Assembly: GCF_006345805.1 (NCBI RefSeq) | Contig: NC_042999.1 | Location: 42,842,001 to 42,906,000 of the forward strand | Length of the DNA stretch: 64,000 nucleotides | Source of the DNA: Octopus sinensis | Lineage: Eukaryota | Direction of reading: 5' to 3' | In this document: one piece after another, positions 9,473 to 58,800 of the stretch | Layout: each line of letters begins with the position of its first letter | Numbering within the stretch: the stretch's first letter is position 1 | The notes under the pieces: model-generated | Databases searched by the model: none | Seen by the model: only the letters and a program-made list of their open reading frames with translations | Told to the model about the DNA's origin: nothing | Translations under genes and position numbers: made by a program

Positions 9473-9503
<31 letters not shown>

Positions 9504-9512: not shown

Positions 9513-9514
9513 TT

Positions 9515-13299: not shown

Positions 13300-13399
13300 N
13301 NNNNNNNNNNNNNNNNNNNNNNNNNNNNNNNNNNNNNNNNNNNNNNNNNNNNNNNNNNNNNNNNNNNNNNNNNNNNNNNNNNNNNNNNNNNNNNNNNNN
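13300..13399. other. Assembly gap (100 N)
   Basis: Run of exactly 100 N between microsatellites. Confidence 1.
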
Positions 13400-35660: not shown

Positions 35661-36464
35661 ACCGATAAAAAAGTCGATGGTTAAAATGTATACATAGAAA
35701 AACAATAGCTGATACTAATCTGACCCTCCTGATGAAGGACATCCGACAAATGACAATCAGGGAATTCCAGAGTTCTAGTATCACACTGATCATATCACCC
35801 TGATCAACAATTGTCTCTCTTAATTATCATTTTTCGAGCAACAAATCCAAGCCTACATTACCAAGTTATTCCTACAATACCAAGTTATTCCTGCATTTTC
35901 GAAATTGTCACAGATCATTTAACAAGTTTACTCCACTCTGAAGTCTAACTTTAAAAAGATGACAGCTTGGCCAAAAATGAACGTATTGGTCTTCGGTCCT
36001 TTGAGAGTCGTCCATCACAATTTTTTTTTTTTTTACACAGCCACAAAGAGAGGGAAACTGTATGCTCTTCCCAGTTAAAGTAGAACGACTAAGGTAACCT
36101 GTGCGATGAAATTGGTTAATAGGCAGAACCGTTCTACACCGTCCTTCAGTCGGCACATGGGGAACTATTGTTAGAATACATTCAACTTAAACTTAAAATG
36201 CGCGTTTCTCTCTGTTTTTTAAGGGGGAAATGAGGTATTCGATCCTTGTACTGACTAAATTTCAGAACTTATCAGATCATAAAAATTCAGAGAAGTTTCT
36301 ACCTTGTGTAGCTTCGACTTTCAGATAAATTTCACAATCTTAATGCAATATAATTTTCGGAATTCAGTTCTTCGATGGAACCTAGAAAATAAAGCATGAA
36401 AACACTAAAATATATTTGTGTAGATCACTAGAAAAATATATATCTTATCTCAAATTCCTATTTT

Positions 36465-37530: not shown

Positions 37531-37796
37531 TACAAATGGACCCTCATAACCAGTCGATGTTTAAAAAAACTCACTTTATCGTTAAATATTATTAGAAATT
37601 ACATAAAAAATTAAAATATTATCACTTCACACTTCGATATCGATAAAATAATCAGTAATATAAACAATATTGACAAAACATATATAGTTACACTATAATT
37701 AGACTTTCCTACTAGTGATAAATTTACTCCACGATATTTGATATAACTGATTTTAAATTCAGTGTTATAAACTGGTAAAAACAGAGAAACGCCTAC

Positions 37797-37853
37797 CTTG
37801 TACTGACTGAACAAGTTTCACAATGTCTTTATAATATAATCTCCGATGGATAT
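37797..37853 (-). other. Candidate 57-nt symmetric (phase 1-1) exon, cassette A
   Basis: rc: ttttccttcttttatcttgtAG | at atc cat cgg aga tta tat tat aaa gac att gtg aaa ctt gtt cag tca gta caa g | GTaggc; open frame (D)IHRRLYYKDIVKLVQSVQ. No transcript evidence. Confidence 0.35.
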
Positions 37854-38123
37854 CTACAAGATAAAAGAAGGAAAATAATTATTTGCAAGTACATTTCAAA
37901 AACCAACCCCCTTTCATCAACTGCTAGACCCATCTAACACGTTTAATCGCTTCTCAACCATTTTGGCAAAGATCAAAGTGTAATATTTGTTCTTATTAAC
38001 TTTATATCAGATATGATGTTCTTGGCTAAGACTTTGGAGCTTGCTCGACCCATGGCTAGGACAGATCTAGTATTGCAGTACGTTTGAGTACGGAAGTATA
38101 AATTGAAAGCAAATTTAGATATC

Positions 38124-38476
38124 TTGTGGCTGTGTGGTAAGTAGCTTGCTTACCAACCATATGGTTCCAGGTTCATTCCCACTGCGTGGCATCTTGGGCA
38201 AGTGTCTGCTACTATAGTCTCGGGCCGACCAAAGCCTTGTGAGTGGATTTGGTAGACGGAAACTGAAAGACGCCCGTCATATATATGTATGTGTGTGTAT
38301 ATGTTTGTGTGTCTGTGTTTGTCCCCCCAACATCGCTTGACAACCGATGCTGGTGTGTTTACGTCGCCGTCACTTAGCGGTTCGGCAAAAGAGACCGATA
38401 GAATAAGTACTAGGCTTCCAAAGAATAAGTCCTGTGGTCGATTTGCTCGACTAAAAGGTGGTGCTCCAGCATGGCA
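38124..38476 (+). mobile_element. SINE family A, 3'-truncated
   Basis: gtggctgtgtggtaagtagcttgcttaccaacc head through gctccagcatggc. Confidence 0.85.
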
Positions 38477-38577
38477 AAAAATAATAATATCATTATATGC
38501 ACTATTGCTCAAATGTCATCGAGTTTCCATGCATTTTCACGACTACCAAATAATTGTTTTTTAGTCTAATGCTACAT

Positions 38578-38900
38578 CTGTGTGTGTGTATGTGTGTGTG
38601 TGTGTGTATGTGTGTGTGTGTGTTTTTGTGTGTGTTTGTGTATGTGTGTATGTGTTGGTGTGTGTGTGTGTATGTGTGTGTGTGTTTTTGTGTGTGTTTG
38701 TGTATGTGTGTATGTGTTTGTGTGTGCATGTGTGTATGTGTTTGTGTGTGTGTGTTTGTGTGTGTGTGTTTGGTGTGTGTGTGGGGGGGGGTTGTGTGTG
38801 TGTGTGAGTGTGTGTTTGTGTATGTGTGTGAGTGTGTGTTTGTGTATGTGTGTGTGTTTGTGTATGTGTGTGCGTGTTTGTGTTTGTGTGTATGTGTGTT
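38578..38900. repeat. Degenerate (GT)n microsatellite
   Basis: Direct reading. Confidence 0.95.
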
Positions 38901-38996
38901 AGCAGAATAGTATCCCCCAAGAAAAGAATAGGAAGGAGCAGATGTAGAAGGGAGATTTGAAAATAAAGTGAAGACATTAAGACAAGATCTGAGTAG

Positions 38997-39123
38997 AATC
39001 CTTTCTACTCTAAGCACAAGGCCCGAGATTTTTGGTGAGGGGGGGGGGCAGTTGATGTAATCGACTATCTACTATCTCTTACCTCCAAAATTTCAGGCCT
39101 TGTGCCTTATAGTACAAAGGATT
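38997..39123. repeat. Short inverted repeat made of two opposed SINE-B tails
   Basis: Left arm aatcctttctactctaagcacaaggcccgagattttt vs rc of right arm aatcctttgtactataaggcacaaggcctgaaatttt. Confidence 0.75.
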
Positions 39124-39334
39124 TCACACATCTCTTCATTCAAAACTTCGAAGCTAAAAAAAGATATTTCATTCAGATTTATCCATTTTCCAGTTCCCGT
39201 TGCAATCCTCACTCAACTCAATACTCTAGCACAGTATCTATCACTCCGTTAAAAATGCTTTGCACTAAGTTAAACAACTAACTTTACATTCATTCACATT
39301 TCATAATTGCCACTTCATATTTCATATACTCATT

Positions 39335-39740
39335 ACTCTTTTACTTGTTTCAGTCATTTGACTGTGGCCACGCTGGAGCACCGCCTTTTAGTCGAGCAAA
39401 TCGACCCCAGGACTTATTCTTTGTAAGCCCGCCCAGTACTTATTCTATCGGTCTCTTTTGCCGAACCGCTAAGTGACGGCGAGGTAAACACACCGGCATC
39501 GGTTGTCAAGCGATGGTGGTGGGGAGGCAAACACAGACACACAAACATACACACACATATCTATATATACATATATACGACGGGCTTCTCTCAGTTTCCG
39601 TCTACCAAATCCACTCAAAAGGCTTTGGTCGGCCCGAGGCTATAGTAGAAAACACTTACCCAACATGCCACGCAGTGGGACTGAACCCGGAACCATGTGG
39701 TTGGTAAGCAAGCTACTTACCACACAGCCACTCCTGCGCC
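39335..39740 (-). mobile_element. SINE family A, full length
   Basis: rc head ggcgcaggagtggctgtgtggtaag, CORE-like segment and tail. Confidence 0.9.
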
Positions 39741-40829
39741 TGTAATATCTGTAATGTCGATAAAAAAATCAGTAATATGGACAATGTTTATAAAATATAA
39801 ACCCCATTACTTTTTCTCAACCAGCCATCTAGAATTATTTTACACATATCTACCCTCAAAACTTCCAAGCTACGAAAACAAAAATTTTAATGAAATATAT
39901 CCATTCTTCTCATTTTTCATTTCCCATTATAATCAATACAGAATACACAATTTGGAAGCGGAAAAACTGTATTGTCGAATTAGTTACATTCACGCTTCAG
40001 AATAATCAAGTAAAGCAATTAACATTTGAAGATTATCGTATCGATAAAATAATCAGTAACAATTAAATTAAAAACAATTCTACTAATGATAAAGCTACTA
40101 CACCATATTTCACACAATTCATTTTATAATCAACGTTATAAGCTGGTGAATACAGCAAATCTTTTACTTTAAACGAACTGCATGTCACACAAATTTCAAT
40201 ATTACTGCACAGTAAGCTGCGGAACGTCCACAAAATAAAAGCCTTTGATTCCAATTTAAAATCGTTACACAATTTCAGATATATTCCACAATTTATTTAT
40301 TCTTCAATGTTTATTTATTCTTCAATAACGAAACACATTTTACATCGCTTGTGTAATAGACTAATCACTTCACAACCTTTTGGCCAAAATCAAAGTATAG
40401 TATCTGCTCATATTACTTTAATATTTGATATGTTCTTTATTTGATATGTCCCTAATATGGAGCCTTCAATATTAAAGTGATTTTCTTTTGGTTCCTCGGC
40501 GAAAATTTTAAGAGTTTGCGCTACCTTTACCTCGAGATGACCTGGGATTGTAGAATATGCCCATTTTCAAACAATTTACACTTCCTCATTTCAAGATTGA
40601 TAAAATAACTAATACATACAGCAAAGATTCGTTAATATAACTAATACATACAACAAAAATTAATATAATGCCTGCAGCTACATTTAAAATTTAACGTTTA
40701 TCAACGAATGATTAATTTACAACACTACATTTGACAAAATTCATTCTAAAATCAAAGCTAATACTCATAAATAAAGCGAAGCGTCTAACTTGTACATATT
40801 GAGTGTCATACGAATTTCACAATGTCTTT

Positions 40830-43800
40830 GCAATATAATCTTCGATGGACATCTACGAGATAAGAACAACAAAAAATTAATTCCAGGTATATTCCAAATA
40901 CTAAACCCATCTACCTAGTTTCATCGCTTCTCAATATAATCTTCAATGGACATATGCAAGATAAAAGAAAGAAAAAATTAATTCCAGGTATATTCCAACT
41001 ACTAAATCCATCTAACTAGTTTAATCGCTTCTTAATATAATCTTCCATGGACATATGCAAGCTAAAAGCAAGAAAAAATTAATTCCAGGTATATTCAAAC
41101 TACTAAAACCATCAAACTAGTTTAATCGCTTCTCAATATAATCTTCGATGGACATACGCAAGATAAAAGCAAGAAAAAATTAATTCCAGGTATGTTCCAA
41201 CTACTAAACCCATCAAACTAGTATAATCGCTTCTCAATATAATCTTCGATGGACATCTGCAAAATAAAAGCAACAAAAAATTAATTCCAGGTATATTCCC
41301 ACTACTAAACTCATCTAACAAGTTTAATCGCTTGTCAATATGATCTTTGATGGACATCTGCAAGAAAAAAGCAAGAGAAAATTAATTCCAGGTATATTCC
41401 CACTACTAAACTCATCTAACTAGTTTAATCACTTCTCGATATAATCTTCGATGGACATCTGCAAGATAAAAGAAAGAAAAAATTAATTCCAGGTATATTC
41501 CAACTACTAAACCTATCAAACTAGTTTAATCGCTTCTCAATATAATCTTCGATGGACATATGCAAGATAAAAGCAACAAAAAATTAATTCCAGGAATATT
41601 CCAACTACTAAAAGCATCAAACTAGTTTAATCGCTTCTCAATATAATCTTCGATGGACATATGCAAGATAAAAGCAAGAAAAAATTAATTCAAGGTATAT
41701 TCCAACTACTAAACCCATCTAACTAGTTTAATCACTTCTCGATATAATCTTCGATGGACATCTGCAAGATAAAAGAAAGAAAAAGGAAATTCCAGGTATA
41801 TTCCAACTACTAAACCCATATGACTAGTTTAATCGCTTCTCAATATAATCTTCGATGGACATCTGCAAGATAAAAGCAACAAAAAATTAATTCCAGGTAT
41901 ATTCCAGCCACTAAACCCATATAACTCGTTTAATCGCTTCTCAATATAATCTTCGATGGACACATGCGAGATAAAAGCAAGAGAAAATTAATTCAAGGTA
42001 TATTCCAACTACTAAACCCATCTAAATAGTTTAATCTCAATATAATCTTCGATGGATATCTGCACGATAAAAGCAAGAACAACTTAATTCCAGGTATATT
42101 CCAACTACTAAACCAAAAAATTAATTCCAGATATGTTCCAACTACTAAACCCATCTAACTAGTTTAATCGCTTCTCAATATAATCTTTGATGGACATCTG
42201 CAATATAAAAGAAACAGAAAATGAATTCCAGGTATATTCCAACTACTAAACCCATTTAAGTAGTTTAATCGCTTCTCAAAATAATCTTCGATGGACACCT
42301 GCAAGATAAAAGCAACAAAAAATTAATTCCAGGCATATTCCAACTGCTAAACCCATCTGACTAGTTTAAACGCATCTCAATATAATCTTTGATGGACATC
42401 TACAAGATAAAAGAAAGAAAGACTAAATTCTAGGTATTTTCCAACTCCTAAACCCATCTAACTAGTGTAATCGCTTCTAAATATAATCTGTGAGGGACAT
42501 CTGCAAGATAAAAGCAACAGAAAATGAATTCCAGGTATATTCCAACAACTAAAACCATCTAACTAGTTTAATCGCTTCTCAATATAATCTTCGATGGACA
42601 TATGCAAGATAAAAGCAAGAAAAAATTAATTCCAGGTATATTCCAACTGCTAAACCCATCTAACTAGTTTCACCGCTTCTCAATATAATATTTGAGGGAC
42701 ATCTGCAAGATAAAAGCAAGAAAAATTAATTCCAGGTATATTCCAACTGCTAAACCCATCTAACTAGTTTAATCACTTCTCAATATAATCTTTGAGGGAC
42801 ATCTGCAAGATAAAAGTAAGAGAAAATGAATTCCAGGTATATTCCAACTACTAAAACCATCTAACTAGTTTAATCGCTTCTCAATATAGTCTTCGATGGA
42901 CATCTACAAGAAAAGCAACAAAAAATTAATTCCAGGTATATTCCAACTACTAAACCCATCTAACTAGTTTAATCACTTCTCAATATAATCTTTGAGAGAC
43001 GTCTGCAAGATAAAAGCAAGAGAAAATGAATTCCAGGTATATTCCAACTACTAAAACCATCTAACTAGTTCAATCGCTTCTCAATATAATCTTTGATGGA
43101 CATCTACAAGATAAAAGAAAGAAAGACTAAATTCTAGGTATTTTCCAAATCCTAAACCCATCTAACTAGTTTATTCGCTTTCAATGTAATCTTGGATGGA
43201 CACATGCAGGAAAAAACAAAGAGTAAATTAATTCCAGGTATATTCCAACTACTAAACCCATCTAACTAGTTTAATCACTTCTCAATATAATTCTTCGATG
43301 GACATATGCAAGATAAATGTAAGAAGAAATTAATTCCAGGTATATTCCAACTACTAAACCCATCTGACTAGTTTAATCGCTTCTCAATATAATCTTCGAT
43401 GGACATCTGCAAGATAAAAGCAAGAAAAATTAATTCCAGGTATATTCCAACTACTAAACCCATCTAACAAGTTTAATCGCTTCTCAATATAATCTTTGAG
43501 GGACATCTACAAGATAAAAGAAAGAAAGACTAACTTCCAGGTATATTCCAACTGCTAAACCCATCTAACTAGTTTAATGGCTTCTCAATAAAATCTTCGA
43601 TGGACATCTGCAAGATAAAAGCAACAAAAATTAATTCCAGGTATATTCCAACTACTGAACCCATCTAACTAGTTTAATCGCTTCTCAATATAATCTTCGA
43701 TGGACATCTGCGAAATAAAAGCAAGAAAAAATTAATTCCTGGTATATTCCAACTGCTAAACCCGTCTAACTAGTTTAATCGCTTCTCAATATAATCTTTC

Positions 43801-46800
43801 AGGGAAATCTGCAAGATAAAAGCAAGAAAAAATTAATTCCAGGTATATTCCTACTACTAAACCAAAAACATAATTCCAGGTATATTCCAACTACTAAGCC
43901 CATCTGACTAGTTTAATCGCTTATCAATATAATCTTCGATGGACATCTGCAAAATAAAAGCAAGAAAAAATTAATTCCAGGTATATTCCAACTACTAAAC
44001 CCATCTAACTAGTTTAATCGCTTCTCAATATAATCTTCGATGGACATCTAAAAAAATAAAAGCAAGAAAAAATTAATTCCAGGTATATTCCAACTACTAA
44101 ACCCATCTAACTAGTTTAATCGCTTCTCAATATAATCTTCGATGGACATCTAAAAAAATAAAAGCAACAAAAAATTAATTCCAGGTATATTCCAACTACT
44201 GAACCCATCTAACTAGTTTAATCGCTTCTCAATATAATCTTCGATGGACATCTGCAAGATAAAAGCAAGAAAAAATTAATTCCAGGTATATTCCACCTAC
44301 TAAACCCATCAAACTAGTTTAATCGCTTCTCAATATAATCTTCGATGGACATCTGCAAGATAAAGCAAGAAAAAATTAATTCCAGGTATATTCCAACTAC
44401 TAAATCCATCTAACTAGTTTAATCGCTTCTCAATATAATCTTCGATGGACATCTGCAAGATAAAAGCAAGAAAAAATTAATTCCAGGTATACTCCAACTA
44501 CTGAACCCATCTAAATAGTTTAATCGCTTCTCAATATAATATTCAATGGACATATGCAAGATAAAAGCAACAGAAAATTAATTCCAGGTATATTCCAACT
44601 ACTAAACCCATCTAAATAGTTTCATCGCTTCTCAATATAATCTTTGATGGACATCTACAAGATAAAAGAAACAAAGAATTAATTCCAGGTATTTTCCAAC
44701 TACTAAACCCATCTAACTAGTTTAATCGCTTTCAATATAATCTTGGATGGACACATGAAGGAAAAAACAAAGAGAAAATTAATTCCATGTATATTCCAAC
44801 TACTAAACCCATCTAGCTAGTTTAATCACTTCTAAATATAATCTTCCATGGACATCTGCAAGATAAAAGCAAGAAAAAATTAACTCCAGGTATATTCCAA
44901 CTACTAAACCCATCTAACTAATTTAATCACTTCTCAATATAATCTTTGAGGGACATCTGCAAGATAAAAGCAAGAGAAAATGAATTCCAGGTATATTCCA
45001 ACTACTAAAACCATCTAACTAGTTTCATCACTTCTCAATATAATCTTTGATAGACATCTGCAAGATAAAAGCAAGAAAAAAGTAATTCCAGGTATACTCC
45101 AAATACTAAACCCATCTAACTAGTTTAATCGCTTTTCAATATAATCTTTGATAGACATCTGCAAGATAAAAGCAAGATAAAATTAGTTCCAGGCATATTC
45201 CAACTACTAAACCCATCTAACTAGTTTAATTACTTCTCAATATAATCTTCGATGGACATCTGCAAAATAAAAGCAAGAAAAAATTAATTCCAGGTATATT
45301 CCAACTACTAAACCCATCTAACTAGTTTAATCGCTTCTCAATATAATCTTCGATCGACATCTGCAAAATAAAAGCAAGAAAAAATTAATACAAGGTATAT
45401 TCCAACTACTAAACCCATCTAACTAGTTTAATCGCTTCTCAATGTAATCTTCGATGGACATCTGCAAGATAAAAGCAAGAAAAAATTAATTCCAGGTATA
45501 TTCCAACTACTATACCCATCTAACTAGTTTAATCGCTTGTCAATATAATCTTCGATGGACATCTGCAAAATGAAAGCAAGAAAAAATTAATTCCAGGTAT
45601 ATTCCAACTACTAAACCCATCTAACTAGTTTAATCGCTTCTCAATATAATCTTCGATGGACATCTACAAGATAAAAGCAAGAAAAAATTAATTCCAGGTA
45701 TATTCCAACTACTAAACACATCTAACTAGTTTAATCGCTTCTCAATATACTCTTCGATGGACATCTGCAAAATAAAAGCAAGAAAAAATTAATTCCAGGT
45801 ATATTCCAACTACTAAACCCATCTAACTAGTTTAATCGCTTCTCAAAATAATCTTCGATGGACATCTACAAGATAAAAGCAAGAAAAAATTAATTCCAGG
45901 TATATTCCAACTACTAAACACATCTAACTAGTTTAATCGCTTCTCAATATACTCTTCGATGGACATCTGCAAAATAAAAGCAAGAAAAAATTAATTCCAG
46001 GTATATTCCAACTACTGAACCCATCTAACTGGTTTAATCGCTTCTCAATATAATCTTTGATGGACATCTACAAGATAAAAGCAAGAGAAAACTAATTCCA
46101 GGTATATTCCATCTACTAAACCCATCTACCTGGTTTAATCGCTTCTCAATATAAGCTTTGATGGACATCTACAAGATAAAAGCAAGAAAAAAATTAATTC
46201 CAGGTATATTCCAACTACTAAACCCATCTAACTGGTTTAATCGCTTCTCAATATAATCTTCGGTGGACATCTGCAAGATAAAAGCAAGAAAAAATTAATT
46301 CCAGGTATATTCCAACTACTAAATCGATCTATTTTTTTAATCCCTTCTCAATATAATCTTCGATGGACATCTGCAAGTTAAAAGCAAGAGAAAATTAATT
46401 CCAGGTATATTCCAACTACTATACCCATCTAACTAGTTTAATCGCTTCTCAATATAATCTTCGATGGACATCTGCAAAATAAAAGGAAGAAAAAATTAAT
46501 TCCAGGTATATTCCAACTACTAAACCATCTAACTAGTTTAATCGCTTCTCAATATAATCTTCGATGGAGTCTGCAAGATAAAAGCAAGAAAAAATTAATT
46601 CCAGGTATATTCCAACTACTAAATCGATCTATTTTTTAATCCCTCTCAATATAATCTTCGATGGACATCTGCTAAATAAAAGAAGAAAAAATTAATTCCA
46701 GGTATATTCCAACTACTAAACCCATCTAACTACTTTAATCGCTTCTCAATATAATCTTCGATGGACATCTGCAAGATAAAGGCAAGAAAAAATTAATTCC

Positions 46801-49800
46801 AGATATATTCCAACTACTAAACCCATCTAACTAGTTTAATCGCTTCTCAATATAATCTTCGATGGACATCTGCAAAATAAAAGCAAGAAAAAATTAATTC
46901 CAGGTATATTCCAACTACTAAACCCATCTAACTGGTTTAATCGCTTCTCAATATAATCTTTGATGGACAGCTACAAGATAAAAGCACGAGAAATTTAATT
47001 CCAGGTATATTCAAACTACTAAACCCATCTAACTAGTTAAATCGCTTCTCAATATAATCTTTGATGGACATCTGCAAAATAAAAGCAAGAAAAAATTAAT
47101 TCCAGGTATATTCCAACTACTTAACCCATCTAACTAGTTTAATCGCTCCTCAATATAATTTTCGATGGACATATACAAGATAATAGCAAGAAAATATTAA
47201 TTCCCAGCTTTTTCCAACTACTAAAACCATCTATTTATTTTCATCGCTTCTCAATATAATCTTCAATGGACATCTGCAAGATAAAAGCAAGAGAAAATTA
47301 ATTCCAGTCATATTCCAACTATTAAACACATCTAACTAGTTTAATCGCTTCTCAATATAATCTTCGATGGACATCTGCAAGATAAAAGCAACAAAAATTA
47401 ATTCCAGGTATATTCCAACTACTAAACCCATCTAACTAGTTTAATCGCTTCTCAATATAATCTTCGATGGACATCTGCAAATAAAAGCAAGAAAAAATTA
47501 ATTCCAGGTATATTCCAACTACTAAACCCATCTAACTGGTTTAATCGCTTCTCAATATAATCTTTGATGGACAGCTACAAGATAAAAGCACGAGAAATTT
47601 AATTCCAGGTATATTCAAACTACTAAACCCATCTAACTAGTTAAATCGCTTCTCAATATAATCTTTGATGGACATCTGCAAAATAGAAGCAAGAAAAAAT
47701 TAATTCCAGGTATATTCCAACTACTTAACCCATCTAACTAGTTTAATCGCTCCTCAATATAATTTTCGATGGACATATACAAGATAATAGCAAGAAAATA
47801 TTAATTCCCAGCTTTTTCCAACTACTAAAACCATCTATTTATTTTCATCGCTTCTCAATATAATCTTCAATGGACATCTGCAACATAAAAGCAAGAGAAA
47901 ATTAATTCCAGTCATATTCCAACTATTAAACCCATCTAACTAGTTTAATCGCTTCTCAATATAATCTTCGATGGACATCTGCAAGATAAAAGCAAAAAAA
48001 TTAATTCCAGGTATATTCCAACTACTAAACCCATCTAACTAGTTTAATCGCTTCTCAATATAATCTTCGATGGACATCTGCAAAATAAAAGCAAGAAAAA
48101 ATTAATTCCAGGTATATTCCAACTACTAAACCCATCTAACTGGTTTAATCGCTCTCAATATAATCTTCGATGGACATCTGCAAGATAACAGCAACAAAAA
48201 ATTAATTCCAGGTATATTCCAACTACTAATCGATCTATTTTTTTAATCCCTTCTCAATATAATCTTCGATGGACATCTGCAAATAAAGAAAGAAAAATTA
48301 ATTCCAGTATATTCCAACTACTAAACCCATCTAACTAGTTTAATCGCTTCTCAATATAATCTTCGATCGACATCTGCAAAATAAAAGCAAGAAAAAATAA
48401 TTCCAGGTATATTCCAACTACTAAACCCATCTAACTAGTTTAATCACTTCTCAATATAATCTTCGATCGACATCTGCAAAATAAATGCAAGAATAAATTA
48501 ATTCCAGGTATATTCCAACTACTAAACCATCTAACTAGTTTAATCGCTTCTCAATATAATCTTCGATGGACATCTGCAAGATAAAAGCAAGAAAAAATTA
48601 ATTCCAGGTATATTCCAACTACTAAACCCATCTAACTAGTTTAAACGCTTCTCAATATAATCTTTGATGGTCATCTGCACAAATAAAGCAAGAAAAAATT
48701 ATTCCAGGTATATTCAACTACTAAACCATCTAACTAGTTTAATTGCTTCTCAATATAATCTTCGATGGACATCTACAAGATAAAAGCAAGAAAAATTAAT
48801 TCCAGGTATATTCCAACTACTAAACCCATCTAACTAGTTAAATCGCTTCTCAATATAATCTTCGATGGACATCTGCAAAACAAAAGCAAGAAATATTAAT
48901 TCCAGGTATATTCCAACTACTAAACCCATCTAACTAATTTAATCGCTTCTCAATATAATCTTCAATGGACATCTGCAAGATAAAAGCAAGAAAAAATTAA
49001 TTCCAGGTATATTCCAACTACTTAACCCATCTAACTAGTTTAATCGCTTCTCAATATAATTTTCGATGGACATCTACAAGATAATAGCAAGAAAATATTA
49101 ATTCCAGGTATTTCCAACTACTAAACCCATCTATATTTTAATCGCTTCTCAATATAATCTTCAAGGACATCTGCAAGATAAAAGCAAGAGAAAATTAATT
49201 CCAGTCATATTCCAACTATTAAACCCATCTAACTAGTTTAATCGCTTCTCAATATAATCTTCGATGGACATCTGCAAGATAAAAGCAAAAAAATTAATTC
49301 CAGGTATATTCCAACTACTAAACCCATCTAACTAGTTTAATCGCTTCTCAATATAATCTTCGATGGACATCTGCAAAATAAAAGCAACAAAAAATTATAT
49401 TCCATGTATATTCCAACTACTAAACCCATCTAACTGGTTTAATCGCTTCTCAATATAATCTTCGATGGACATCTGCAAGATAACAGCAAGAAAAAATTAA
49501 TTCCAGGTATATTCCAACTACTAAATCGATCTATTTTTTTTAATCCCTTCTCAATATAATCTTCGATGGACATCTGCTGAATAAAAGAAAGAAAAAATTA
49601 ATTCCAGGTATATTCCAACTACTAAACCCATCTAACTACTTTAATCGCTTCTCAATATAATCTTCGATCGACATCTGCAAAATAAAAGCAAGAAAAAACT
49701 AATTCCAGGTATATTCCAACTACTAAACCCATCTAACTAGTTTAATCACTTCTCAATATAATCTTCGATCGACATCTGCAAAATAAAAGCAAGAATAAAT

Positions 49801-52800
49801 TAATTCCAGGTATATTCCAACTACTAAACCCATCTAACTAGTTTAATCGCTTCTCAATGTAATCTTCGATGGACATCTGCAAGATAAAAGCAAGAAAAAA
49901 TTAATTCCAGGTATATTCCAACTAGTAAACCCATCTAACTAGTTTAAACGCTTCTCAATATAATCTTTGATGGACATCTGCACAATAGAAGCAAGAAAAA
50001 ATTAATTCCAGGTATATTCCAACTACTAAACCCATCTAACTAGTTTAATTGCTTCTCAATATAATCTTCGATGGACATCTACAAGATAAAAGCAAGAAAA
50101 AATTAATTCCAGGTATATTCCAACTACTAAACCCATCTAACTAGTTTAATCGCTTCTCAATATAATCTTCCATGGACATCTGCAAAATAAAAGCAAGAAA
50201 AAATTAATTCCAGGTATATTCCAACTACTAAACCCATCTGACTAGTTTAATCGCTTCTCAATATAATCTTCGATGGACATCTGCAAGATAAAAGCAAGAA
50301 AAAATTAATTCCAGATATATTCCAACTACTAAACCCATCTAACTGGTTTAATCGCTTCTCAATATAATCTTTGATGGACAGCTACAAGATAAAAGCACGA
50401 GAAATGTAATTCCAGGTATATTCAAACTACTAAACCCATCTAACTAGTTAAATCGCTTCTCAATATAATCTTCGATGGACATCTGCAAAACAAAAGCAAG
50501 AAAAATTAATTCCAGGTATATTCCAACTACTAAACCCATCTAACTAGTTTAATCGCTTCTCAATATAATCTTCAATGGACATCTGCAAGATAAAAGCAAG
50601 AAAAAATTAATTCCAGGTATATTCCAACTGCTAAACCCATCTAACTAGTTTAATCGCTTCTCAATATAATCTTCGATGGACATCTGCAAGATAAAAGCAA
50701 GAAAAAATTAATTCCAGGTATATTCCAAATACTAAACCCATCTAACTAGTTTAATCGCTTCTCAATATAATCTTCGATGGACATCTGCAAAATAAATGCA
50801 AGAAAAAATTAATTCCAGGTATATTCCAACTACTAAACCCATCTAACTGATTTAATCGCTTCTCAATATAATCTTTGATGGACATCTACAAGATAAAAGC
50901 AAGATAAAATTAGTTCCAGGTATATTCCAGCTTCTAAACACATCTAACTAGTTTAATCGCTTCTCAATATAATCTTCGATGGACTTCTACAAAATAAAAG
51001 CAAGAAAAAAATTAATTCCAGATATATTCCAACTAGTAAACCCATCTAACTAGTTTAATCTCTTATTAATATAAGCTTTCATGGACATCTACAAGATAAA
51101 AGCAAGAGAAAATTTATTCCAGGCTATTTCTAACGACTAAATCGATCTATTTTTTTTAATCCCTTCTCAATATAAGCTTCGATGGACATCTGCAAGATAA
51201 AAGCATGATAAAATTAGTTCCAGGTATATTCCAGCTTCTAAACCCATCTAACTAGTTTAATCGCTTCTTAATATAATCTACGATGGACATCTGTAAAATA
51301 AAAGCTAGAAAAAATTATTTCCAGGTATTTTCCAACTACTAAACCCATCTAACTAGTTTAATCGCTTCTCAATATAATCTTCGATGGACTTCTACAAAAT
51401 AAAAGCAAGAAAAAATTAATTCCAGATATATTCCAACTAGTAAACCCATCTAACTAGTTTAATCTCTTCTCAATATAAGCTTTGATGGACATCTACAAGA
51501 TAAAAGCAAGAAAGTTAATTCCAGGTATATTCCAACTACTAAATCGATCTATTTTTTTTAATCCCTTCTCAATATAATCTTCGATGGACATCTGCAAGAT
51601 AAAAGCAAGAGAAAATTAATTCCAGGCTTATTCTAACGGCTAAATCGATCTATTTTTTTTAATCCCTTCCCAATATAAGCTTCGATGGACATCTGCAAGA
51701 TAAAAGCAAGATAAAATTAGTTCCAGGCATATTCCAACTACTAAACCCATCTAACTAGTTTAATTGCTTCTCAATATAATCTTCGATGGACATCTGCAAA
51801 ATAGAAGCGAGAAAAAATTATTTCCAGGTATATTCCAACTACTAAACACATCTAACTAGTTTAATCGCTTCTCAATATAATCTTCGATGGACATCTGCAA
51901 GATAAAAGCAAGAAAAAATTAATTCCAGGTATATTCCAACTACTAAACCCATCTAACTAGTTTAATCGCTTCTCAATATAATCTTCGATGGACATCTGCA
52001 AAATAAAAGCAAGAAAAAATTATTTCCAGGTATATTCCAACTACAAAACCCATCTAACTAGTTTAATCGCTTCTCAATATAATCTTCGATGGACATCTGT
52101 AAAATAAAAGCAAGGAAAAATTATTTCCAGGTATATTCCAACTACTAAACCCATCTAACTAGTTTACTCGCTTCTCAATATAATCTTCGATGGACATCTG
52201 CAAAATAAAAGCATGAAACAATTAATTCCAGATATATTCCAACTAGTAAACCCATCTAACTAGTTTAATCGCTTCTCAATATAATCTTTGATGGACATCT
52301 ACAAGATAAAAGCAAGAGAATATTAATTCCAGGTATATTCCAACTACTAAACCCATCTTACTCGTTTAATCGCTTCTCAATATAATCTTCGATGGACGTC
52401 TGCAAGATAAAAGCAAGAAAAAATTAATTCCAGGTATATTCCAACTACTAAATCGATCTATTATTTTTAATCCCGTCTTAATATAATCTTCGATGGACAT
52501 CTGCAAGATAAAAGCAAGAGAAAATTAATTGCAGGCTTATTGTAACTACTAAATCGATCTATTTTTTTTAATCCCTTCTCAATATAATCTTCGATGGACA
52601 TCTGCAAAATAAAAGCAAGAAAAAATTAATTCCACGTATATTCCAACTGCTAAACCCTTCTAACTAGATTAATCGCTTCTCAAAATAATCTTCGATGGAC
52701 ATCTGCAAGATAAAAGCAAGAATAAATTAATTCCAGGTATATTCCAAATACTACACCGATCTAACTAGTTTAATCGCTTCACAATATAATCTTCGATGGA

Positions 52801-55800
52801 CATCTACAAAATAAAAGCGAGAGAAAATTAATTCCAGGTATATTCCAACTACTAAACCCATCTAACTAGTTTAATCGCTTCTCAATATAAACTTCGATGG
52901 ACATCTGCAAGATAAAAGCAAGAAAAATTAATTCCAGGTATATTCCAACTACTAAACCCATCTAACTAGTTTAATCGCTTCTCAATATAATCTTCGATGG
53001 ACATCTGCAAGATAAAAGCAAGAGAAAATTAATTCCAGGTATATTCCAATTACTAAACCCATCTAACTAGTTTAATCGCTTCTCAATATAATCTTCGATG
53101 GACATCTGCAAGATAAAAGCAAGAAAAAATTAATTCCAGGTATATTCCAACTACTAAACCCATCTAACTAGTTTAATCGACTCTCAATATAATCTTCGAT
53201 GGACATCTGCAAGATAAAAGCAAGAAAAAATTAATTCCAGGTATATTCCAACTACTAAACCCATCTAACTAGTTTAATCGCTTCTCAATGTAATCTTCGA
53301 TGGACATCTGCAAGATAAAAGCAAGAAAAAATTAATTCCAGGTATATTCCAACTAGTAAACCCATCTAACTAGTTTAAACGCTTCTCAATATGATCTTCG
53401 ATGGACATCTGCAAGTTAAAAGCAAGAAAAAATTAATTCCAGGTATATTCCAACTACTAAACCCATGTAACTAGTTTAATCGCTTCTCAATATAATCTTC
53501 GATGGACATCTGCAAAATAAAACTAAGAAAAAATTAATTCCAGGTATATCCCAACTACTAAACCCATCTAACTAGTTTAATCGCTTCCCAATATAATCTT
53601 CGATGGACATCTACAAGATAAAAGCAACAACAAAAAATTAATTCCAGGTATATTCCAACTACTAAACCCATCTAACTGGTTTAATCGCTTCTCAATATAA
53701 TCTTCGATGGACATCTGCAAGATAAAAGCAAGAAACAATTAATTCCAGGTATATTCCAACTACTAAATCGATCTATTTTTTTTAATCCCTTCTCAATATA
53801 ATCTTCGATGGACATCTGCAAGATAAAAGCAAGATAAAATTAGTTCCAGGCATATTCCAACTACTAAACCCATCTAAATAGTTTAATTGCTTCTCAATAT
53901 AATCTTCGATGGACATCTGCAAAATAAAAACCAGAAAAAATTATTTCCAGGTATATTCCAACTACTAAACCCATCTAACTAGTTTAATCGTTTCTCAATA
54001 TAATCTTCGATGGACATCTGCAAGATAAAAGCAAGAAAAAATTAATTCCAGGAATATTCCAACTACTAAACCCATCTAACTAGTTTAATCGCTTCTCAAT
54101 TTAATCTTCGATGGAGATCTGCAAAATAAAAGCAAGAAGAAATTAATTCCAGGTATATTCCAACTACTAAACCCATCTAACTAGTTTAATCGCTTCTCAA
54201 TATAATCTTCGATGGACATATGCAAAATAAAAGCAAGAAAAAATTAATTCCAGGTATATTCCAACTACTAAACCCATCTAACTAGTTTAATCGCTTCTCA
54301 ATAAAATCTTCAATGGACATCTGCAAGATAAAAGCAAGAAAAAATTAATTCCAAGTATATTCCAACTGCTAAACCCATCTAACTAGTTTAATCGCTTCTC
54401 AATATAATCTTCGATGGACATCTGCAGAATAAATGCAAGAAAAAATTGATTCCAGGTATATTCCAACTACTAAACCCATCTAACTGATTTAATCGCTTCT
54501 CAATATAATCTTTGATGGACATCAACAAGATAAAAGCAAGAGAAAATTAATTCCAGGTATATTCCAACTACTAAACCCATCTAACTGGTTTAATCGCTTC
54601 TCAATATAATCTTCGATGGACATCTGTAAAATAAAAGCAAGAAAAAATTATTTCCAGGTATATTCCAACTTCTAAACCCATCTAACTAGTTTAATCGCTT
54701 CTCAATATAATCTTCGATGGACATCTGCAACATAAAAGCAAGAAAAAATTAATTCCAGATATATTCCAACTAGTAAACCCATCTAACTAGTTTAATCGCT
54801 TCTCAATATAATCTTTGATGGACATCTACAAGATAAAAGCAAGAGAAAATTAATTCCAGGTATATTCCAACTACTAAACCCATCTAATTGGTTTAATCTC
54901 TTCTCAATATAAGCTTTGAGGGACATCTACAAGATAAAAGCAAGAAAAAAATTAATTCCAGGTATATTCCAACTACTAAACCCATCTTACTGGTTTAATC
55001 GCTTCTCAATATAATCTTCGATGGACGTCTGCAAGATAAAAGCAACAAAATATTAATTCCAGGTATATTCCAACTACTAAATCGATCTATTATTTTTAAT
55101 CCCGTCTCAATATAATCTTTGATGGACGTCTGCAAGATAAAAGCAAGAAAAAATTAATTCCAGGTATGTTCCAACTACTAAATCGATCTAATTTTTTAAT
55201 CCCTTCTCAATATAATCTTCGATGGACATCTGCAAGATAAAAGCAAGAGAAAATTAATTCCAGGCTTATTCTAACTACTAAATCGATCTATTTTTTTTAA
55301 TCCCTTCTCAACATAATCTTCGATGGACATCTGCAAAATAATAGCAAGAAAAAATTATTTCCAGGTATATTCCAACTACTAAACCCATCTAACTAGTTTA
55401 ATGGCTTCTCAATATAATCTTCGATGGACATCTGCAAGATAAAAGCAAGAAAACATTAATTCCAGGTATATTCCAACTACTAAACCCATCTAACTAGTTT
55501 AATCGCTTCTCAATATAATCTTCGATGGACATCTGCAAAATAAAAGCAAGAAAAAATTAATTCCAGGTATATTCCAACTACTAAACCCATCTAACTAGTT
55601 TAATCGCTTCTCAATATAATCTTCGATGGACATCTGCAAGATAAAAGCAAGAAAAAATTAATTCCAGGTATATTCCAACTACTACACCCATCTAACTAGT
55701 TTAATCGATTCACAATATAATCTTCGATGGACATCTACAAAATAAAAGCGAGAAAAAATTAATTCCAGGTATATTCCAACTACTCAACCCATCTAACTAG

Positions 55801-58800
55801 TTTAATCGCTTCTCAATATAATCTTCGATGGACATCTGCAAGATAAAAGAAACAAAATTTAATTCCGGGTATATTCCAACTACTAAACCAATCTAACTTG
55901 TTTAATCGCTTCTCCGTATACTCTTCGATGTATATCTGCAAAATAAAAGCAAGAGAAAATTAATTCCAGGTATATTCCAACTACTAAGCCCATCTAACTA
56001 GTTTAATCGCTTCTCAATATAATCTTCGATGGACATCTGCAAAATAAAAGCGATAAAAATTTAATTCCAGGTATATTCCAACTACTAAACCCATGTAACT
56101 AGTTCAATCCCTTCTCAATATAATCTTCGATGGACATCTGCAAAATAAAAGCAAGAAATTATTAATTCCAGATATATTCCAACTAGTAAACCCATCTAAC
56201 TACTTTAATCGCTTCTCAATATAATCTTCGATGGACATCTGCACAATAAAAGCAAGAAAAAATTTATTCCAGGTATATTCCAGCTACTAAACCCATCTAA
56301 CTAGTTTAATCGTCTCTCAATATAATCTTCGATGGACATCTGCAAAATAAAATCAAGAAAAAATTAATTCCAGGTATATTCCAACTACTAATCCCATCTA
56401 ACTAGTTTAATCGCTTCTCAATATAATCTTCGATGGACATCTGCAAAATAAAAGCAAGAAAAAATTAATTCCAGGGATATTCCAACTACTAAACCCATCT
56501 AACTAGTTTAATCGCTTCTCAATATAATCTTCGATGGACATCTGCAAAATAAAAGCGAGAAAAGATTAATTCCCGGTATATTCCATCTACTAAACCCATC
56601 TAACTAGTTTAATCGCTTCTCAATATAATCTTCCATGGGCATCTGCAAGATAAAAGCAAGAAAAAATTAATTCCAGGTATATTCCAACTACTAAACCCAT
56701 CTAACTAGTTTAATCGCTTCTCAATATAATCTTCGATGGACATCTGCAAAATAAAAGCAAGAAAAAATTAGTTCCAGGTATATTCCAACTACTAAACCCA
56801 TCTAACTAGTTTAATCGCTTCTCAATATAATCTTCGATGGACATCTGCAAAATAAAAGCAAGAAAAAATTAATTCCAGGTATATTCCAACTACTAAACCC
56901 ATCTAACTAGTTTAATCGCTTCTCAATATAATCTTCGATGGACATCTGTAAATTAAAAGCGAGAAATGATTATTTCCAGGTATATTCCAACTACTAAACC
57001 CATCTAACTAGTTTAATTGCTTCTCAATATAATCTTCGATGGACATCTGCAAGATAAAAGCAAGAAAAAATTAATTCCAGGTATATTCCAACTACTAAAC
57101 CCATCTAACTAGTTTAATCGCTTCTCAATATAATCTTCGATGGACATCTGCATAATAAAAGCAAGAAAAAATTAATTCCATGTATATTCCAACTACTAAA
57201 CCCATCTAACTAGTTTAATCGCTTCTCAATATAATCTTTGATGGACATCTGCAAAATAAAAGCAAGAAAAAATTAATTCCAGGTATATTCCAACTACTAA
57301 ACCCGTATGACTAGTTTAATTGCTTCTCAATATAATCTTCGATGGACATCTGCAAAATAAAAGCGAGAAAAACTTAATTCCAGGTATATTCCAACTACTA
57401 AACCCATGTAACTAGTTTAATCCATTCTCAATATAATCTTCGATGGACATCTGCAAGATAAAAGCATTAAAAAATTAATTGCCCGTATATTCCAAATACT
57501 AAACCAAAAAATTAATTCCAGGTATATTCCATCTACTCAACCCAAAAATTAATTGCAGGTATATTCCAACTACTAAACCCATCTAACTAGTTTAATCGCT
57601 TCTCAATATTATCTTCGATGGACATCTACGAGATAAAAGCAAGAAAAAATTAATTCCAGGTATATTTCAACCACTAAACCCATCTAACTAGTTTACTCGC
57701 TTTTCAATATAATCTTCGATGGACCTCTAGAAGAGACAAGCAAGAAAAAATTAATTTCAGGTATATTCCAACTACTAAACCCATCTAACTAGTTTAATCG
57801 CTTTTCAGTATAATCTTCGATGGACATCTGCAAGATAAAAGCAACAAAAAATTAATTCCAGGTATATTCCAACTACTAAACCCATCTACTAGTTTAATCG
57901 CTCCTCAATATGATTTTCGATGGACATCTACAAGGTAATAGCAAGAAGATATTAATTCCCAGCTTTTTTCAACTACTAAATCCATCTATTTATTTTAATC
58001 GCTTCTCAATATAATTTTCAATGGACATCTGCAAGATAAAAGCAAGAGAAAATTAATTCCAATCATATTCCAACTATAAAACCAATCTAACTAGTTCAAT
58101 CGCTTCTCAATATAATCTTCGATGGACATCTGCAAGATAAAAGCAAGAAAGAAATTAATTCCAGGTATATTCCAAATACTAAACCAAAAAAGTAATTCTA
58201 GGTATATTCCAACTACTCAACCAAAAAATTATTTCCAGGTATATTCCAACTACTTAACCCATCTAACTAGTTTAATTTCTTCTCAATATAAACTTTGATG
58301 GACATCTGCAAGATAAAAGCAAGAAAAAAATTAATTCCAGGTGTATTCCAACAACTAAACCAAAAAATTAATTCCAGGTATATTCCAACTACCTAACCAA
58401 AAAATTAATTCCAGGTATATTCAAACTACCTAACCAAAAAATTAATTCCAGTCATATTCCAACTACTAAACCCATCTAACTAGTTTAATCGCTTCTCAAT
58501 ATAATCTTCGATGGACATCTGCAAAATAAAAGCAAAAAAAAATTAATTCCAGGTATATTCCAACTACTAAACCCATCTAACTAGTTTAATCGCTTTCAGT
58601 ATAATCTTCGATGGACATCTGCAAGATAAAAGCAAAAAAAAATTAATTCCAGGTATATCCAACTACTAAAACCATCTTACTAGTTTAATCGCTCCTCAAT
58701 ATGATTTTCGATGGACATCTACAAGGTAATAGCAAGAAGAATTAATTCCAGCTTTTTCCAACTACTAAATCCATCTATTTATTTTAATCGCTTCTCAATA

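What the first reader, a model, noticed from the sequence alone, without database searches (positions are those of the whole stretch)
37797..41100. The 23-kb satellite appears to have arisen locally from an acceptor cassette, giving about 230 tandem 3' splice sites
Seen: a single non-tandem relative of the monomer lies at 37830-37960 (aatataatctccgatggatatctacaagataaaag...cccatctaacacgtttaatcgcttctcaa), and cassette B runs seamlessly into monomer 1. On the minus strand each monomer reads TTAAT (branch-like)-TTTTTCTTGCTTTTATCTTGCAG|ATGTCCATCGAAGATTATATTG, then rejoins upstream intron-like sequence via a short TTG microhomology; about 25 bp of the ancestral unit are lost. No good donor is present in the monomer. 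Each copy also holds a 12-codon micro-ORF (MSIEDYIEKRLN*). Inference: the seed and the array are both visible. If transcribed, the RNA would be a polymer of U2AF/SF1 sites acting as a splicing-factor sponge or decoy acceptor field.
Basis: partly seen in the sequence, partly recalled or inferred. Interest (0 to 1): 0.72.

Follow-up and report, generated by a model that had tools for sequence, protein, structure and literature searches.

The report
Satellite born from U2 snRNA pseudogene
A tandem array of 101-base units, at least 23 kb long, in an octopus genome grew on the spot out of the upstream flank and first 12 bases of a decayed U2 snRNA gene copy; its splice-acceptor look on the opposite strand is probably a coincidence, so this is ordinary satellite DNA with an unusually clear birth record.

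Summary
About 223 head-to-tail 101-bp units run from 40831 to the window end. One clear solitary relative lies at 37832-37957. The array's first unit continues a flank (40573-40830) that is homologous to the flank of that relative.

The interpretation needs replacing. Rfam finds degenerate U2 spliceosomal RNA copies at 37946-38100 and 40364-40576 on the + strand. The 'cassettes' are units of a decayed tandem cluster of U2 snRNA pseudogenes, each about 330 bp of 5' flank plus U2, with a period of about 540-590 bp. The monomer is U2 flank -89..-1 plus U2 bases +1..+12 (ATCGCTTCTCAA), closed on itself through a CAA microhomology.

Local origin is therefore supported. The 'acceptor cassette' and splicing-factor sponge are not:
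- The minus-strand polypyrimidine-YAG motif is real (191 of 213 regular units keep it), but it is the most variable part of the unit.
- There is no donor in the monomer.
- The 12-codon ORF shows no coding constraint.

I could test neither transcription nor distribution across the genome. The best reading is neutral satellite DNA derived from an snRNA gene cluster, a new member of a known kind (compare the 5S-rDNA-derived satellites).

The parts
36240..36450 (+). Partial, most diverged copy of the U2 5'-flank unit ('unit 0'). It runs into the 34-36-bp minisatellite.
   Evidence: nhmmer with units A and B gives weak hits at 36240-36402 and 36282-36367. The multiple alignment places it with the other units.
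37615..37945 (+). Unit A: 5' flank of a U2 pseudogene, homologous to the flanks of units A' and B.
   Evidence: Local alignment of 37615-37957 with 40573-40934. nhmmer E = 6e-20 to 6e-22.
37832..37957 (+). Solitary relative of the monomer (the 'seed' homologue): U2 flank -114..-1 plus U2 +1..+12. It is 84% identical to the monomer consensus over the 101 shared columns and carries 22 extra bp.
   Evidence: nhmmer hit 37833-37953, E = 3e-11. MAFFT row of A against 213 monomers.
37946..38100 (+). U2 snRNA pseudogene A. The 5' 48 nt are recognisable, the stem-loop II / Sm region is deleted, and the branch-point-recognition GUAGUA has become GTAATA.
   Evidence: Rfam RF00004, 49.3 bits against a gathering score of 46, E = 8.6e-07. 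nhmmer with human U2 gives E = 1e-8, with 80% identity over aligned pairs.
38126..38475 (-). tRNA-derived octopus-type SINE inserted just downstream of pseudogene A. It forms an inverted pair with the SINE at 39333-39743.
   Evidence: Self-BLAST and nhmmer with the SINE. Inverted repeats I1-I3.
39333..39743 (+). Second SINE insertion inside the old U2 cluster.
39745..39985 (+). Truncated further copy of the start of the unit (TCGATAAAAAAATCAGTAATAT...).
   Evidence: nhmmer hit 39753-39800 against 37636-37683, which is weak (E = 0.16). The multiple alignment agrees.
40036..40363 (+). Unit A': 5' flank, with insertions that include an 18-bp tandem duplication at 40292-40326.
   Evidence: Alignment of 37634-38023 with 40036-40437. 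nhmmer E = 3e-13 to 1.5e-17. Tandem Repeats Finder reports the duplication.
40364..40576 (+). U2 snRNA pseudogene A'. It is full length against the model (positions 1-192), with broken stems and a degenerate Sm site.
   Evidence: Rfam RF00004, 48.3 bits, E = 1.5e-06. nhmmer with human U2 gives E = 5e-9.
40573..40830 (+). Unit B: the part of the 5' flank that lies upstream of the amplified segment. It starts directly after pseudogene A', which shows that the old cluster was head to tail.
40831..64000 (+). The 101-bp satellite, about 223 units, all head to tail on the + strand and cut by the window end. Each unit is U2 flank -89..-1 plus U2 +1..+12. Mean identity is 94.5% to the consensus and 90% between pairs.
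40923..40934 (+). First copy of the U2 5'-end dodecamer ATCGCTTCTCAA in the array. After the CAA the sequence jumps back to flank position -89. The array holds 140 exact copies.
   Evidence: Sequence reading. Motif count: 140 in the array, 1 in the flank (at unit A).
46747..48156 (+). Local higher-order block: a 6-monomer period repeated, with 98.4% identity between blocks.
   Evidence: Diagonal-run analysis of the monomer identity matrix. The variant-site map shows the same pattern.
58109..62797 (+). Zone of later rearrangement. It holds 37-bp internal duplications of monomer positions 41-77 and a block duplication of about 1.2 kb (58796-59999 and 61604-62797, 97.6% identical).
   Evidence: Tandem Repeats Finder rows with period 37. 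nhmmer partial hits. Diagonal runs.

Best explanation
The region 36.2-40.9 kb is the wreck of a small head-to-tail cluster of U2 snRNA gene units. Each unit is about 330 bp of 5' flank plus about 190 bp of U2, giving a period of about 540-590 bp. The units had already become pseudogenes and were later broken up by two SINEs, a (TG)n tract and a minisatellite.

In the last unit (B), a segment running from about 89 bp upstream of the U2 start to U2 base +12 was duplicated in tandem. The join used a 3-bp microhomology: CAA at U2 +10..+12 matches CAA just upstream of the segment. That 101-bp unit was then amplified to more than 220 copies. Nearly flat identity at all distances points to an early, fast burst. 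Irregular multi-monomer block duplications and 37-bp internal duplications followed.

Shown: the U2 identity of the units, the register of the array edge, the microhomology, and the lack of sequence constraint on the acceptor motif and the micro-ORF.

Inferred: the array has no sequence-specific function and is neutral satellite DNA, probably silent chromatin. Its minus-strand 3'-splice-site look is then a by-product of the A-rich U2 upstream flank read backwards.
For: Rfam U2 hits above the gathering score in two units, confirmed with human U2 by nhmmer.

The monomer aligns with 37832-37957, whose last 12 bases are the first 12 of the U2 hit.

Flank homology extends 220-330 bp upstream of the monomer between units A, A' and B. 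It extends downstream into the U2 body between A and A'. The monomer is therefore a sub-segment of the unit and not the reverse.

Unit B begins where pseudogene A' ends (40573 against 40576), so the old cluster was tandem.

A, A' and the monomer share the changes CTCGG to CTCAA in the U2 5' end. A and A' also share a 1-nt insertion. The decay therefore predates the duplications.

No constraint is visible. The acceptor tract has diverged 8.5% against 4.1% elsewhere. The ORF nonsynonymous fraction is 0.79 against 0.82 expected.

Identity is independent of distance: 0.9055 at lag 1 and 0.8994 at lag 100. There are a few block duplications.

The array holds no SINE, while the 40.8-kb flank holds about 11 insertions. 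P(0) is about 0.002 for 11 events and 0.0002 counting all 15 pieces. This fits an array that is younger than the SINE burst or that turns over.
Against: No data on transcription, chromatin or other loci could be reached. The satellite's translations found nothing in the protein collection. Two metagenome scans found nothing. 'Neutral' and 'unique to this locus' are therefore inferences.

The distal end of the array lies outside the window.

The U2 copies score only just above Rfam's threshold (49 and 48 bits against 46). The evidence that the flank is U2's own promoter flank is indirect: full-length U2, tandem units and a shared flank. That is not a promoter assay.

The minus-strand acceptor motif is strong for chance. 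Sites scoring at least 8 bits occur about 0.11 times per kb, or about 0.02 expected per 101-bp unit counting both strands. Units A and 0 also carry a donor-like AAG|GTAG downstream of it.
Confidence: 0.8

Rival explanations
1. The units are minus-strand exon or acceptor cassettes. The array, once transcribed on the minus strand, is a polymer of branch-point, polypyrimidine and AG sites that soaks up U2AF/SF1 or acts as a field of decoy acceptors.
For: The consensus motif scores 8.55 bits, within the top 0.2% of AG sites in the flank. 191 of 213 units keep YAG, and 175 score at least 6 bits. On the minus strand, unit A has an acceptor at 37854 (8.48 bits) and a donor AAG|GTAGGC at 37796 (5.07 bits), 57 nt apart. 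Unit 0 has a similar pair.
Against: The same DNA is explained on the + strand as U2 flank plus the U2 5' end.

The motif is the most variable part of the monomer. The monomer has no donor. The exon-like stretches differ in length by amounts that are not multiples of three (57, 64 and about 79 nt) and carry stops. Unit A' lacks the AG (sequence).

About 0.7 acceptor-donor pairs of this quality are expected by chance in the flank (my estimate). No evidence of transcription could be obtained.
Confidence: 0.03
2. The array is a working or half-working battery of snRNA-type promoters. Each unit keeps the proximal promoter and start site of a Pol II snRNA gene, so it binds SNAPc and Pol II, or gives short capped RNAs that begin AUCGCUUCUCAA.
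For: Each unit holds the U2 start site and 89 bp upstream of it. An ATTCCAA motif at -33..-27 (ATTTCAA at -52..-46 in unit A) recalls the invariant ATTC-CAA core of the Drosophila PSEA (PMC1761439). There are 140 exact copies of the U2 5' dodecamer.
Against: The parent genes were already pseudogenes. In the monomer the candidate promoter element sits about 20 bp closer to the start than in unit A. SNAPc-dependent promoters depend on spacing, which is general knowledge rather than something tested here. No 3' box follows. The resemblance to the PSEA is a 7-of-8 match recalled across phyla, in a promoter class that evolves fast (PMC1761439). No position in the unit stands out as conserved.
Confidence: 0.06
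3. The units are copies of a mobile element, either an snRNA-headed SINE (SINEU type) or a MITE/Helitron-type element with internal repeats. The array is an expansion of that element's internal repeat, and many such arrays lie elsewhere.
For: SINEs with U1- or U2-derived heads exist (PMC4494074). One 'U' SINE family is listed for Octopus vulgaris (PMC13282606). Satellites derived from transposable elements are common in molluscs (PMC5615363).
Against: Homology between copies extends at least 220-330 bp upstream of the U2 start, whereas a SINEU would begin at U2 +1. U2 is full length in A'. No terminal inverted repeats bound the units. No further copy of the unit or monomer lies in the other 36 kb of the window. 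The units are contiguous head to tail.
Confidence: 0.06

Closest known systems
5S rDNA-derived satellite DNAs (5SHindIII of Hoplias malabaricus, PcP190 of frogs, the Plantago B-chromosome satellite), as cited in PMC12692304, PMC4201667 and PMC11675491
   Same: A satellite family seeded by a unit of a tandemly repeated small-RNA gene family that escaped from its parent cluster and was amplified.
   Different: Those satellites keep most of the transcribed 5S region (about 120 bp in PcP190). This one keeps only 12 nt of the gene, and the rest is 5' flank. The parent here is a Pol II snRNA gene. Seed and array lie side by side at one locus.
Tandem snRNA gene clusters (snDNA), for example the 761-bp U1 snDNA unit detected as ClatSat13-761 (PMC12274263). 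From my own knowledge: the human RNU2 6.1-kb array and the Xenopus U2 repeats.
   Same: The old 540-590-bp macro-unit (flank plus U2, head to tail) is of this kind.
   Different: Here the genes are decayed: they score just above the Rfam threshold, with broken stems, Sm site and branch-point-recognition sequence. What was amplified is a sub-segment, not the gene unit.
Satellites derived from the rDNA intergenic spacer (PMC5615363; tomato, PMC2679016)
   Same: Non-coding spacer or promoter-side sequence of a tandem RNA gene family becomes an independent satellite through sub-repeat amplification.
   Different: The gene family differs. No evidence here that the sub-repeats carry promoter or enhancer activity.
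Tandem repeats with snRNA similarity in Rana temporaria (family 138A, similar to U5/U4; PMC12054243)
   Same: Tandem repeat families that carry snRNA-like sequence.
   Different: That report rests on a Dfam similarity for whole families. No seed locus or junction was described. Here the derivation can be read base by base.
SINEU, SINEs with U1/U2-derived heads (PMC4494074)
   Same: U2-derived sequence multiplied in a genome.
   Different: SINEU spreads by retroposition and starts at the snRNA 5' end. Here the copies share upstream flank, are tandem, and keep only +1..+12.

Membership tests
Satellite DNA | Long uninterrupted head-to-tail array of one monomer. | tested here: met
   The 101-bp period runs from 40831 to the window end (over 23 kb). 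There are about 223 units, all on the + strand, with no foreign insertion.
Satellite DNA | Abundant in the genome or present at several loci, and located in heterochromatin. | not testable with these tools
   No eukaryotic genome collection is on hand. The protein-collection search and the metagenome scans found nothing. Two single 21-base matches in Legionella MAGs are chance.
U2 spliceosomal RNA gene (Rfam RF00004) | Covariance-model score at or above the family's gathering score. | tested here: met
   37946-38100 scores 49.3 bits and 40364-40576 scores 48.3 bits, against a gathering score of 46.
U2 spliceosomal RNA gene (Rfam RF00004) | Intact functional elements: stem I, the branch-point-recognition GUAGUA, the Sm site and the 3' stem-loops. 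| tested here: not met
   Stem I is broken in both copies (CGG to CAA). Copy A reads GTAATA and has lost about 40-57 nt around stem-loop II and the Sm site. Copy A' reads ATTTTCT at the Sm site and has many non-standard pairs. They are therefore pseudogenes.
snRNA-type Pol II promoter (PSE plus start site) | A proximal sequence element at the correct distance (about -55) from the start site, matching the species' own PSE. | tested here: inconclusive
   No cephalopod PSE consensus is available. ATTCCAA sits at -33..-27 in the monomer, and ATTTCAA at -52..-46 in unit A. Both only resemble the Drosophila core ATTC-CAA (PMC1761439).
   The consensus scores 8.55 bits on a rough matrix, and 191 of 213 units keep YAG.
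   Divergence from the consensus is 8.6% at YAG and 8.5% across the tract, against 4.1% elsewhere.
   No RNA or CLIP data can be reached.
SINEU / retroposed snRNA copy | The copy begins at the snRNA 5' end with unrelated upstream sequence, and has a 3' tail and target-site duplication. | tested here: not met
   The upstream flank is homologous over 220-330 bp in three units. The units abut head to tail.
Transposon-borne satellite (MITE/Helitron type) | Terminal inverted repeats or other element ends around the repeat-bearing unit, and dispersed copies. | tested here: not met
   No inverted repeats bound the units. No other copy lies in the window. Genome-wide dispersal cannot be tested.

The most novel reading that the evidence does not exclude
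The array is not inert. More than 220 tandem copies of an snRNA core promoter plus U2 start site might still recruit SNAPc and Pol II, or nucleate a Cajal-body-type compartment. They might also yield short capped RNAs carrying the U2 5' end. Read on the other strand, the array might offer hundreds of 3'-splice-site mimics. Either way it would be a satellite that titrates part of the snRNA or splicing machinery.
Probability: 0.05. Interest if true: 0.75.

Novelty: new member of a known kind. Interest (0 to 1): 0.36.

Why it matters
The precursor of a satellite can rarely be read base by base next to its array. This locus shows the parent (a decayed U2 snRNA gene cluster), the exact segment taken (-89..+12), the 3-bp microhomology at the founding junction, and later growth by block and sub-monomer duplications. 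That makes it a clean case study for how satellites are born from multigene families.

It also adds a Pol II snRNA gene flank to the known 5S-rDNA and rDNA-spacer sources. The library I searched holds no description of a U2-derived satellite in cephalopods.

It is a caution as well. A convincing splice-acceptor look came from reading an A-rich promoter flank on the wrong strand.

Tried and rejected
1. I translated the monomer trimer on both strands and searched the 5.8-billion-protein collection. The aim was to find the satellite in other assemblies or transcriptomes. 288 word candidates turned up and none scored.

2. Exact-pattern scans: metagenome contigs twice, with nothing found. The scan of prokaryotic genome contigs gave two single matches in Legionella MAGs. 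They are not tandem and reach only E = 0.01-0.03 against the monomer, so they are chance.

3. An exact look-up of a window ORF to locate the source contig found nothing on record.

4. A regular higher-order repeat is rejected. Identity is flat with lag. Variant autocorrelation shows only weak, irregular peaks at lags 12-13, 28 and 36, plus one local 6-mer block.

5. A gradient of ancestral states from the proximal edge is rejected. Monomers share 0-6% of the states specific to unit A everywhere along the array.

6. Coding constraint on the micro-ORF is rejected.

7. Derivation of the neighbouring 34-36-bp minisatellite (36454-37543) from U2 or from a sister unit is rejected. There is no significant similarity: nhmmer gives E = 6.6, and local alignment scores fall within the range of shuffled sequences.

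8. Terminal inverted repeats around the units: none found.

9. BLAST self-comparison of the array at 93-96% identity was uninformative, because the background identity is as high.

10. The polarity of the 21-22-bp length difference between monomer and unit A stays unresolved.

Full report
**What is there**

The window is octopus DNA. It carries tRNA-derived SINEs of the octopus type, as judged from my own knowledge of these elements. A Penelope-like reverse-transcriptase ORF at 21030-22001 finds its best relatives in Octopus sinensis (91% identity) and O. bimaculoides (82%).

From 40831 to the window end, Tandem Repeats Finder reports a 101-bp period. An nhmmer search with the consensus finds 242 hits in the array, all on the + strand. 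About 223 units begin in the window. 213 of them are regular. The others carry extra copies of a 37-bp internal piece, monomer positions 41-77.

The array is 68% A+T and is not interrupted by any foreign sequence. The flanking 40.8 kb holds 15 SINE pieces, about 11 insertions, so zero SINEs in 23.2 kb is unlikely by chance. P is about 0.002 for 11 events and 0.0002 counting the pieces.

**Check of the observation**

- The only significant monomer hit outside the array is 37833-37953 (E = 3e-11).
- 40573-40934 aligns with 37615-37957 and runs straight into monomer 1.
- The founding junction can be read directly. Unit A has CTTCTCAA|CCATTTT, unit B has TTTGCAA|TATAATC, and the array has CTTCTCAA|TATAATC.
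- The monomer is 22 bp shorter than unit A over the homologous stretch. That stretch is 74 bp in a fourth partial copy and 150 bp in unit A', so I cannot say which lineage changed.
- The minus-strand consensus reads TTAATTTTTTCTTGCTTTTATCTTGCAG|ATGTCC, and no donor follows it.
- The 12-codon ORF is in the consensus. It is exact in 69 of 206 units, and 136 of 206 keep the same start, length and stop.

**What the 'cassettes' are**

A scan of the window against Rfam at gathering thresholds gives exactly two matches. Both are U2 spliceosomal RNA on the + strand, at 37946-38100 (49.3 bits) and 40364-40576 (48.3 bits), against a gathering score of 46. The alignments are shown.

Both copies are degenerate:
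- Stem I is broken in both (CTCGGCC has become CTCAACC).
- Copy A has lost the stem-loop II and Sm region and reads GTAATA in place of GUAGUA.
- Copy A' is full length but has many broken pairs and a spoiled Sm site.

The CTCAA change is shared by A, A' and the monomer, and a 1-nt insertion is shared by A and A'. The gene was therefore already decaying before these copies were made.

The homology between units is much longer than the monomer. Units A, A' and B share about 220-330 bp upstream of the U2 start. A and A' also share the U2 body. Unit B starts at 40573, just where pseudogene A' ends at 40576.

The region is thus the remains of a head-to-tail cluster of U2 gene units with a period of about 540-590 bp. 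Further fragments lie at 36240-36450 and 39745-39985. Later insertions broke the cluster up: two SINEs (38126-38475 and 39333-39743), a (TG)n tract, a small palindromic element and a minisatellite.

In monomer coordinates (Tandem Repeats Finder phase), positions 93-101 plus positions 1-3 of the next unit spell ATCGCTTCTCAA. These are U2 bases +1..+12. Positions 4-92 are U2 flank -89..-1. The array holds 140 exact copies of that dodecamer, and the flank holds one, at unit A.

**Direction of derivation**

Unit A carries the monomer-homologous segment in its natural setting. The upstream flank it shares with B lies on one side. The U2 body it shares with A' lies on the other. In B the upstream flank is kept, and the U2 body is replaced by the next monomer.

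An array that arrived from elsewhere would not have its edge in register with the unit.

No other copy of the unit or the monomer lies in the remaining 36 kb. No inverted terminal repeats bound the units. The shared upstream flank argues against an snRNA-headed SINE of the kind described in PMC4494074.

**How the array grew**

Mean identity to the consensus is about 94.5% and pairwise identity is 90%. It barely depends on distance: 0.9055 at lag 1 against 0.8994 at lag 100. States specific to unit A show no gradient from the proximal edge. This pattern fits an early fast amplification followed by independent decay.

Later local events are superimposed on it:
- a 6-monomer block repeated at 46747-48156 (98.4% identical);
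- a duplication of about 1.2 kb between 58796-59999 and 61604-62797 (97.6% identical);
- recurrent variant haplotypes;
- 37-bp sub-duplications.

The CpG positions are the fastest-decaying sites (11% against 4-6%), as expected for methylated, unconstrained DNA.

The Octopus vulgaris repeat clock in PMC13282606 equates a Jukes-Cantor distance of 0.065 with about 18 million years. If it applies here, a distance of about 0.057 puts the burst at very roughly 15 million years ago. This is an inference, and it depends on the species.

**The splice-site reading**

I scored sites with a rough 3' splice-site matrix built from general knowledge and not trained on cephalopods. The monomer's site scores 8.55 bits. 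Only 9 of 4354 AG sites in 81.7 kb of flank (both strands) reach 8 bits. The resemblance is therefore real and uncommon, at about 0.02 expected per 101-bp unit.

The homologous sites in unit A (37854, 8.48 bits) and in the partial copy (36382, 7.16 bits) are each followed by a donor-like AAG|GTAG. About 0.7 such acceptor-donor pairs are expected in the flank by chance. The copies are also homologous, so they are not independent observations.

Several things count against a function:
- The tract is the most variable part of the monomer (8.5% against 4.1%).
- Unit A' lacks the AG.
- The exon-like stretches differ by non-triplet lengths and contain stops.
- The monomer has no donor.
- The micro-ORF has a nonsynonymous fraction of 0.79, against 0.82 expected under uniform mutation.

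The simplest account is that the A-rich stretch of the U2 upstream flank reads as a pyrimidine tract on the other strand.

**A promoter reading**

Each unit keeps the U2 start site and 89 bp upstream of it. One can therefore ask whether it keeps an snRNA promoter. The monomer has ATTCCAA at -33..-27. Unit A has ATTTCAA at -52..-46, near the usual place of a proximal sequence element. The invariant core of the Drosophila PSEA is ATTC-CAA (PMC1761439).

This is a lead and not a test. That promoter class evolves fast, and no cephalopod consensus is at hand. The parent genes were pseudogenes, and in the monomer the motif sits about 20 bp too close to the start. I give this reading about 6%.

**Comparison with what is known**

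Satellites seeded by tandem RNA gene families are a known kind:
- 5S-rDNA-derived satellites in fish, frogs and plants (references in PMC12692304; PMC4201667; PMC11675491);
- satellites derived from the rDNA spacer (PMC5615363; PMC2679016);
- tandem repeats with snRNA similarity in a frog (PMC12054243);
- tandem snRNA gene units that appear as 'satellites' in repeat surveys (PMC12274263).

My searches of the paper library found no U2-derived satellite and no description of octopus satellites. A 2025 review of satellite origins does not mention snRNA genes. I therefore file this as a new member of a known kind.

Its merit is the legibility of its origin. Its oddity is that what was amplified is almost all flank, with only 12 nt of the gene.

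**Limits**

I could not search any eukaryotic genome or transcriptome. Uniqueness of the locus, presence in related species, transcription on either strand and chromatin state are all open. The far end of the array is outside the window. The two U2 matches lie just above Rfam's threshold, but an independent sequence search and the 5' 48 nt support them.

**Verdict**

The best explanation is a neutral satellite that grew in situ from the 5' flank and first 12 nt of a U2 snRNA pseudogene (confidence about 0.8). Interest is moderate.

Noticed in passing
window 36454-37543: A minisatellite of about 30 copies of a 34-36-bp C-rich unit (ATTCCTATTTTACACAAATGGACCCCCCACCCTCTG). It starts right after the partial U2-flank copy at 36240-36450. 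I found no significant similarity to U2 or to the sister units, so its origin is unexplained.
   Followed up: yes
window 37796-37854, minus strand: Unit A carries an exon-like pair on the minus strand: the acceptor TTTATCTTGTAG| at 37854 (8.48 bits) and the donor AAG|GTAGGC at 37796 (5.07 bits), 57 nt apart. The partial copy has a similar pair (acceptor at 36382, donor CACAAG|GTAGAA). This may be chance or an antisense non-coding exon. It needs RNA data.
   Followed up: partly
window 38126-38475 (-) and 39333-39743 (+): Two SINE copies, 90% identical, in inverted orientation. They enclose a 320-bp (TG)n tract (38579-38899) and a palindromic MITE-like element (38982-39138) with relatives at 8320-8426, 12445-12611 and 15302-15376.
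   Followed up: partly
window 40831-64000 against 1-40830: The satellite holds no SINE, while the flank holds 15 SINE pieces (about 11 insertions). Either the array is younger than the SINE burst or insertions are lost through array turnover.
   Followed up: yes
window 19227-22344 (+) and 28449-31192 (-): Two Penelope-like retroelement remnants. The first has a reverse-transcriptase ORF, and many of its relatives carry the GIY-YIG nuclease domain PF01541. The second has a GIY-YIG-type motif in its own ORF (my reading) and lies in a block of 49-55% G+C with strong G skew (26-32 kb), quite unlike the 30-40% G+C of the rest of the window.
   Followed up: partly
window 26244-27713: A 1.5-kb degenerate (TG/TGTA)n tract. 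Many other long microsatellites lie in the window, for example (TACA)n at 6401-6660 and (TA)n at 9260-9513.
   Followed up: no
window 13300-13399: A run of exactly 100 N, which is an assembly gap.
   Followed up: yes
window 32877-33208 and 20009-20270: Two short tandem duplications with long periods: 164 bp x2 at 90% identity, and 138 bp x1.9 at 88%. The second lies within the first Penelope-like remnant (19227-22344).
   Followed up: no
window 57470-62068: Within the satellite, a 37-bp piece (monomer positions 41-77) has been re-duplicated in several places, up to three extra copies in a row. This makes a third level of nested tandem repetition: the U2 unit, then the 101-bp monomer, then the 37-bp piece.
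   Followed up: partly
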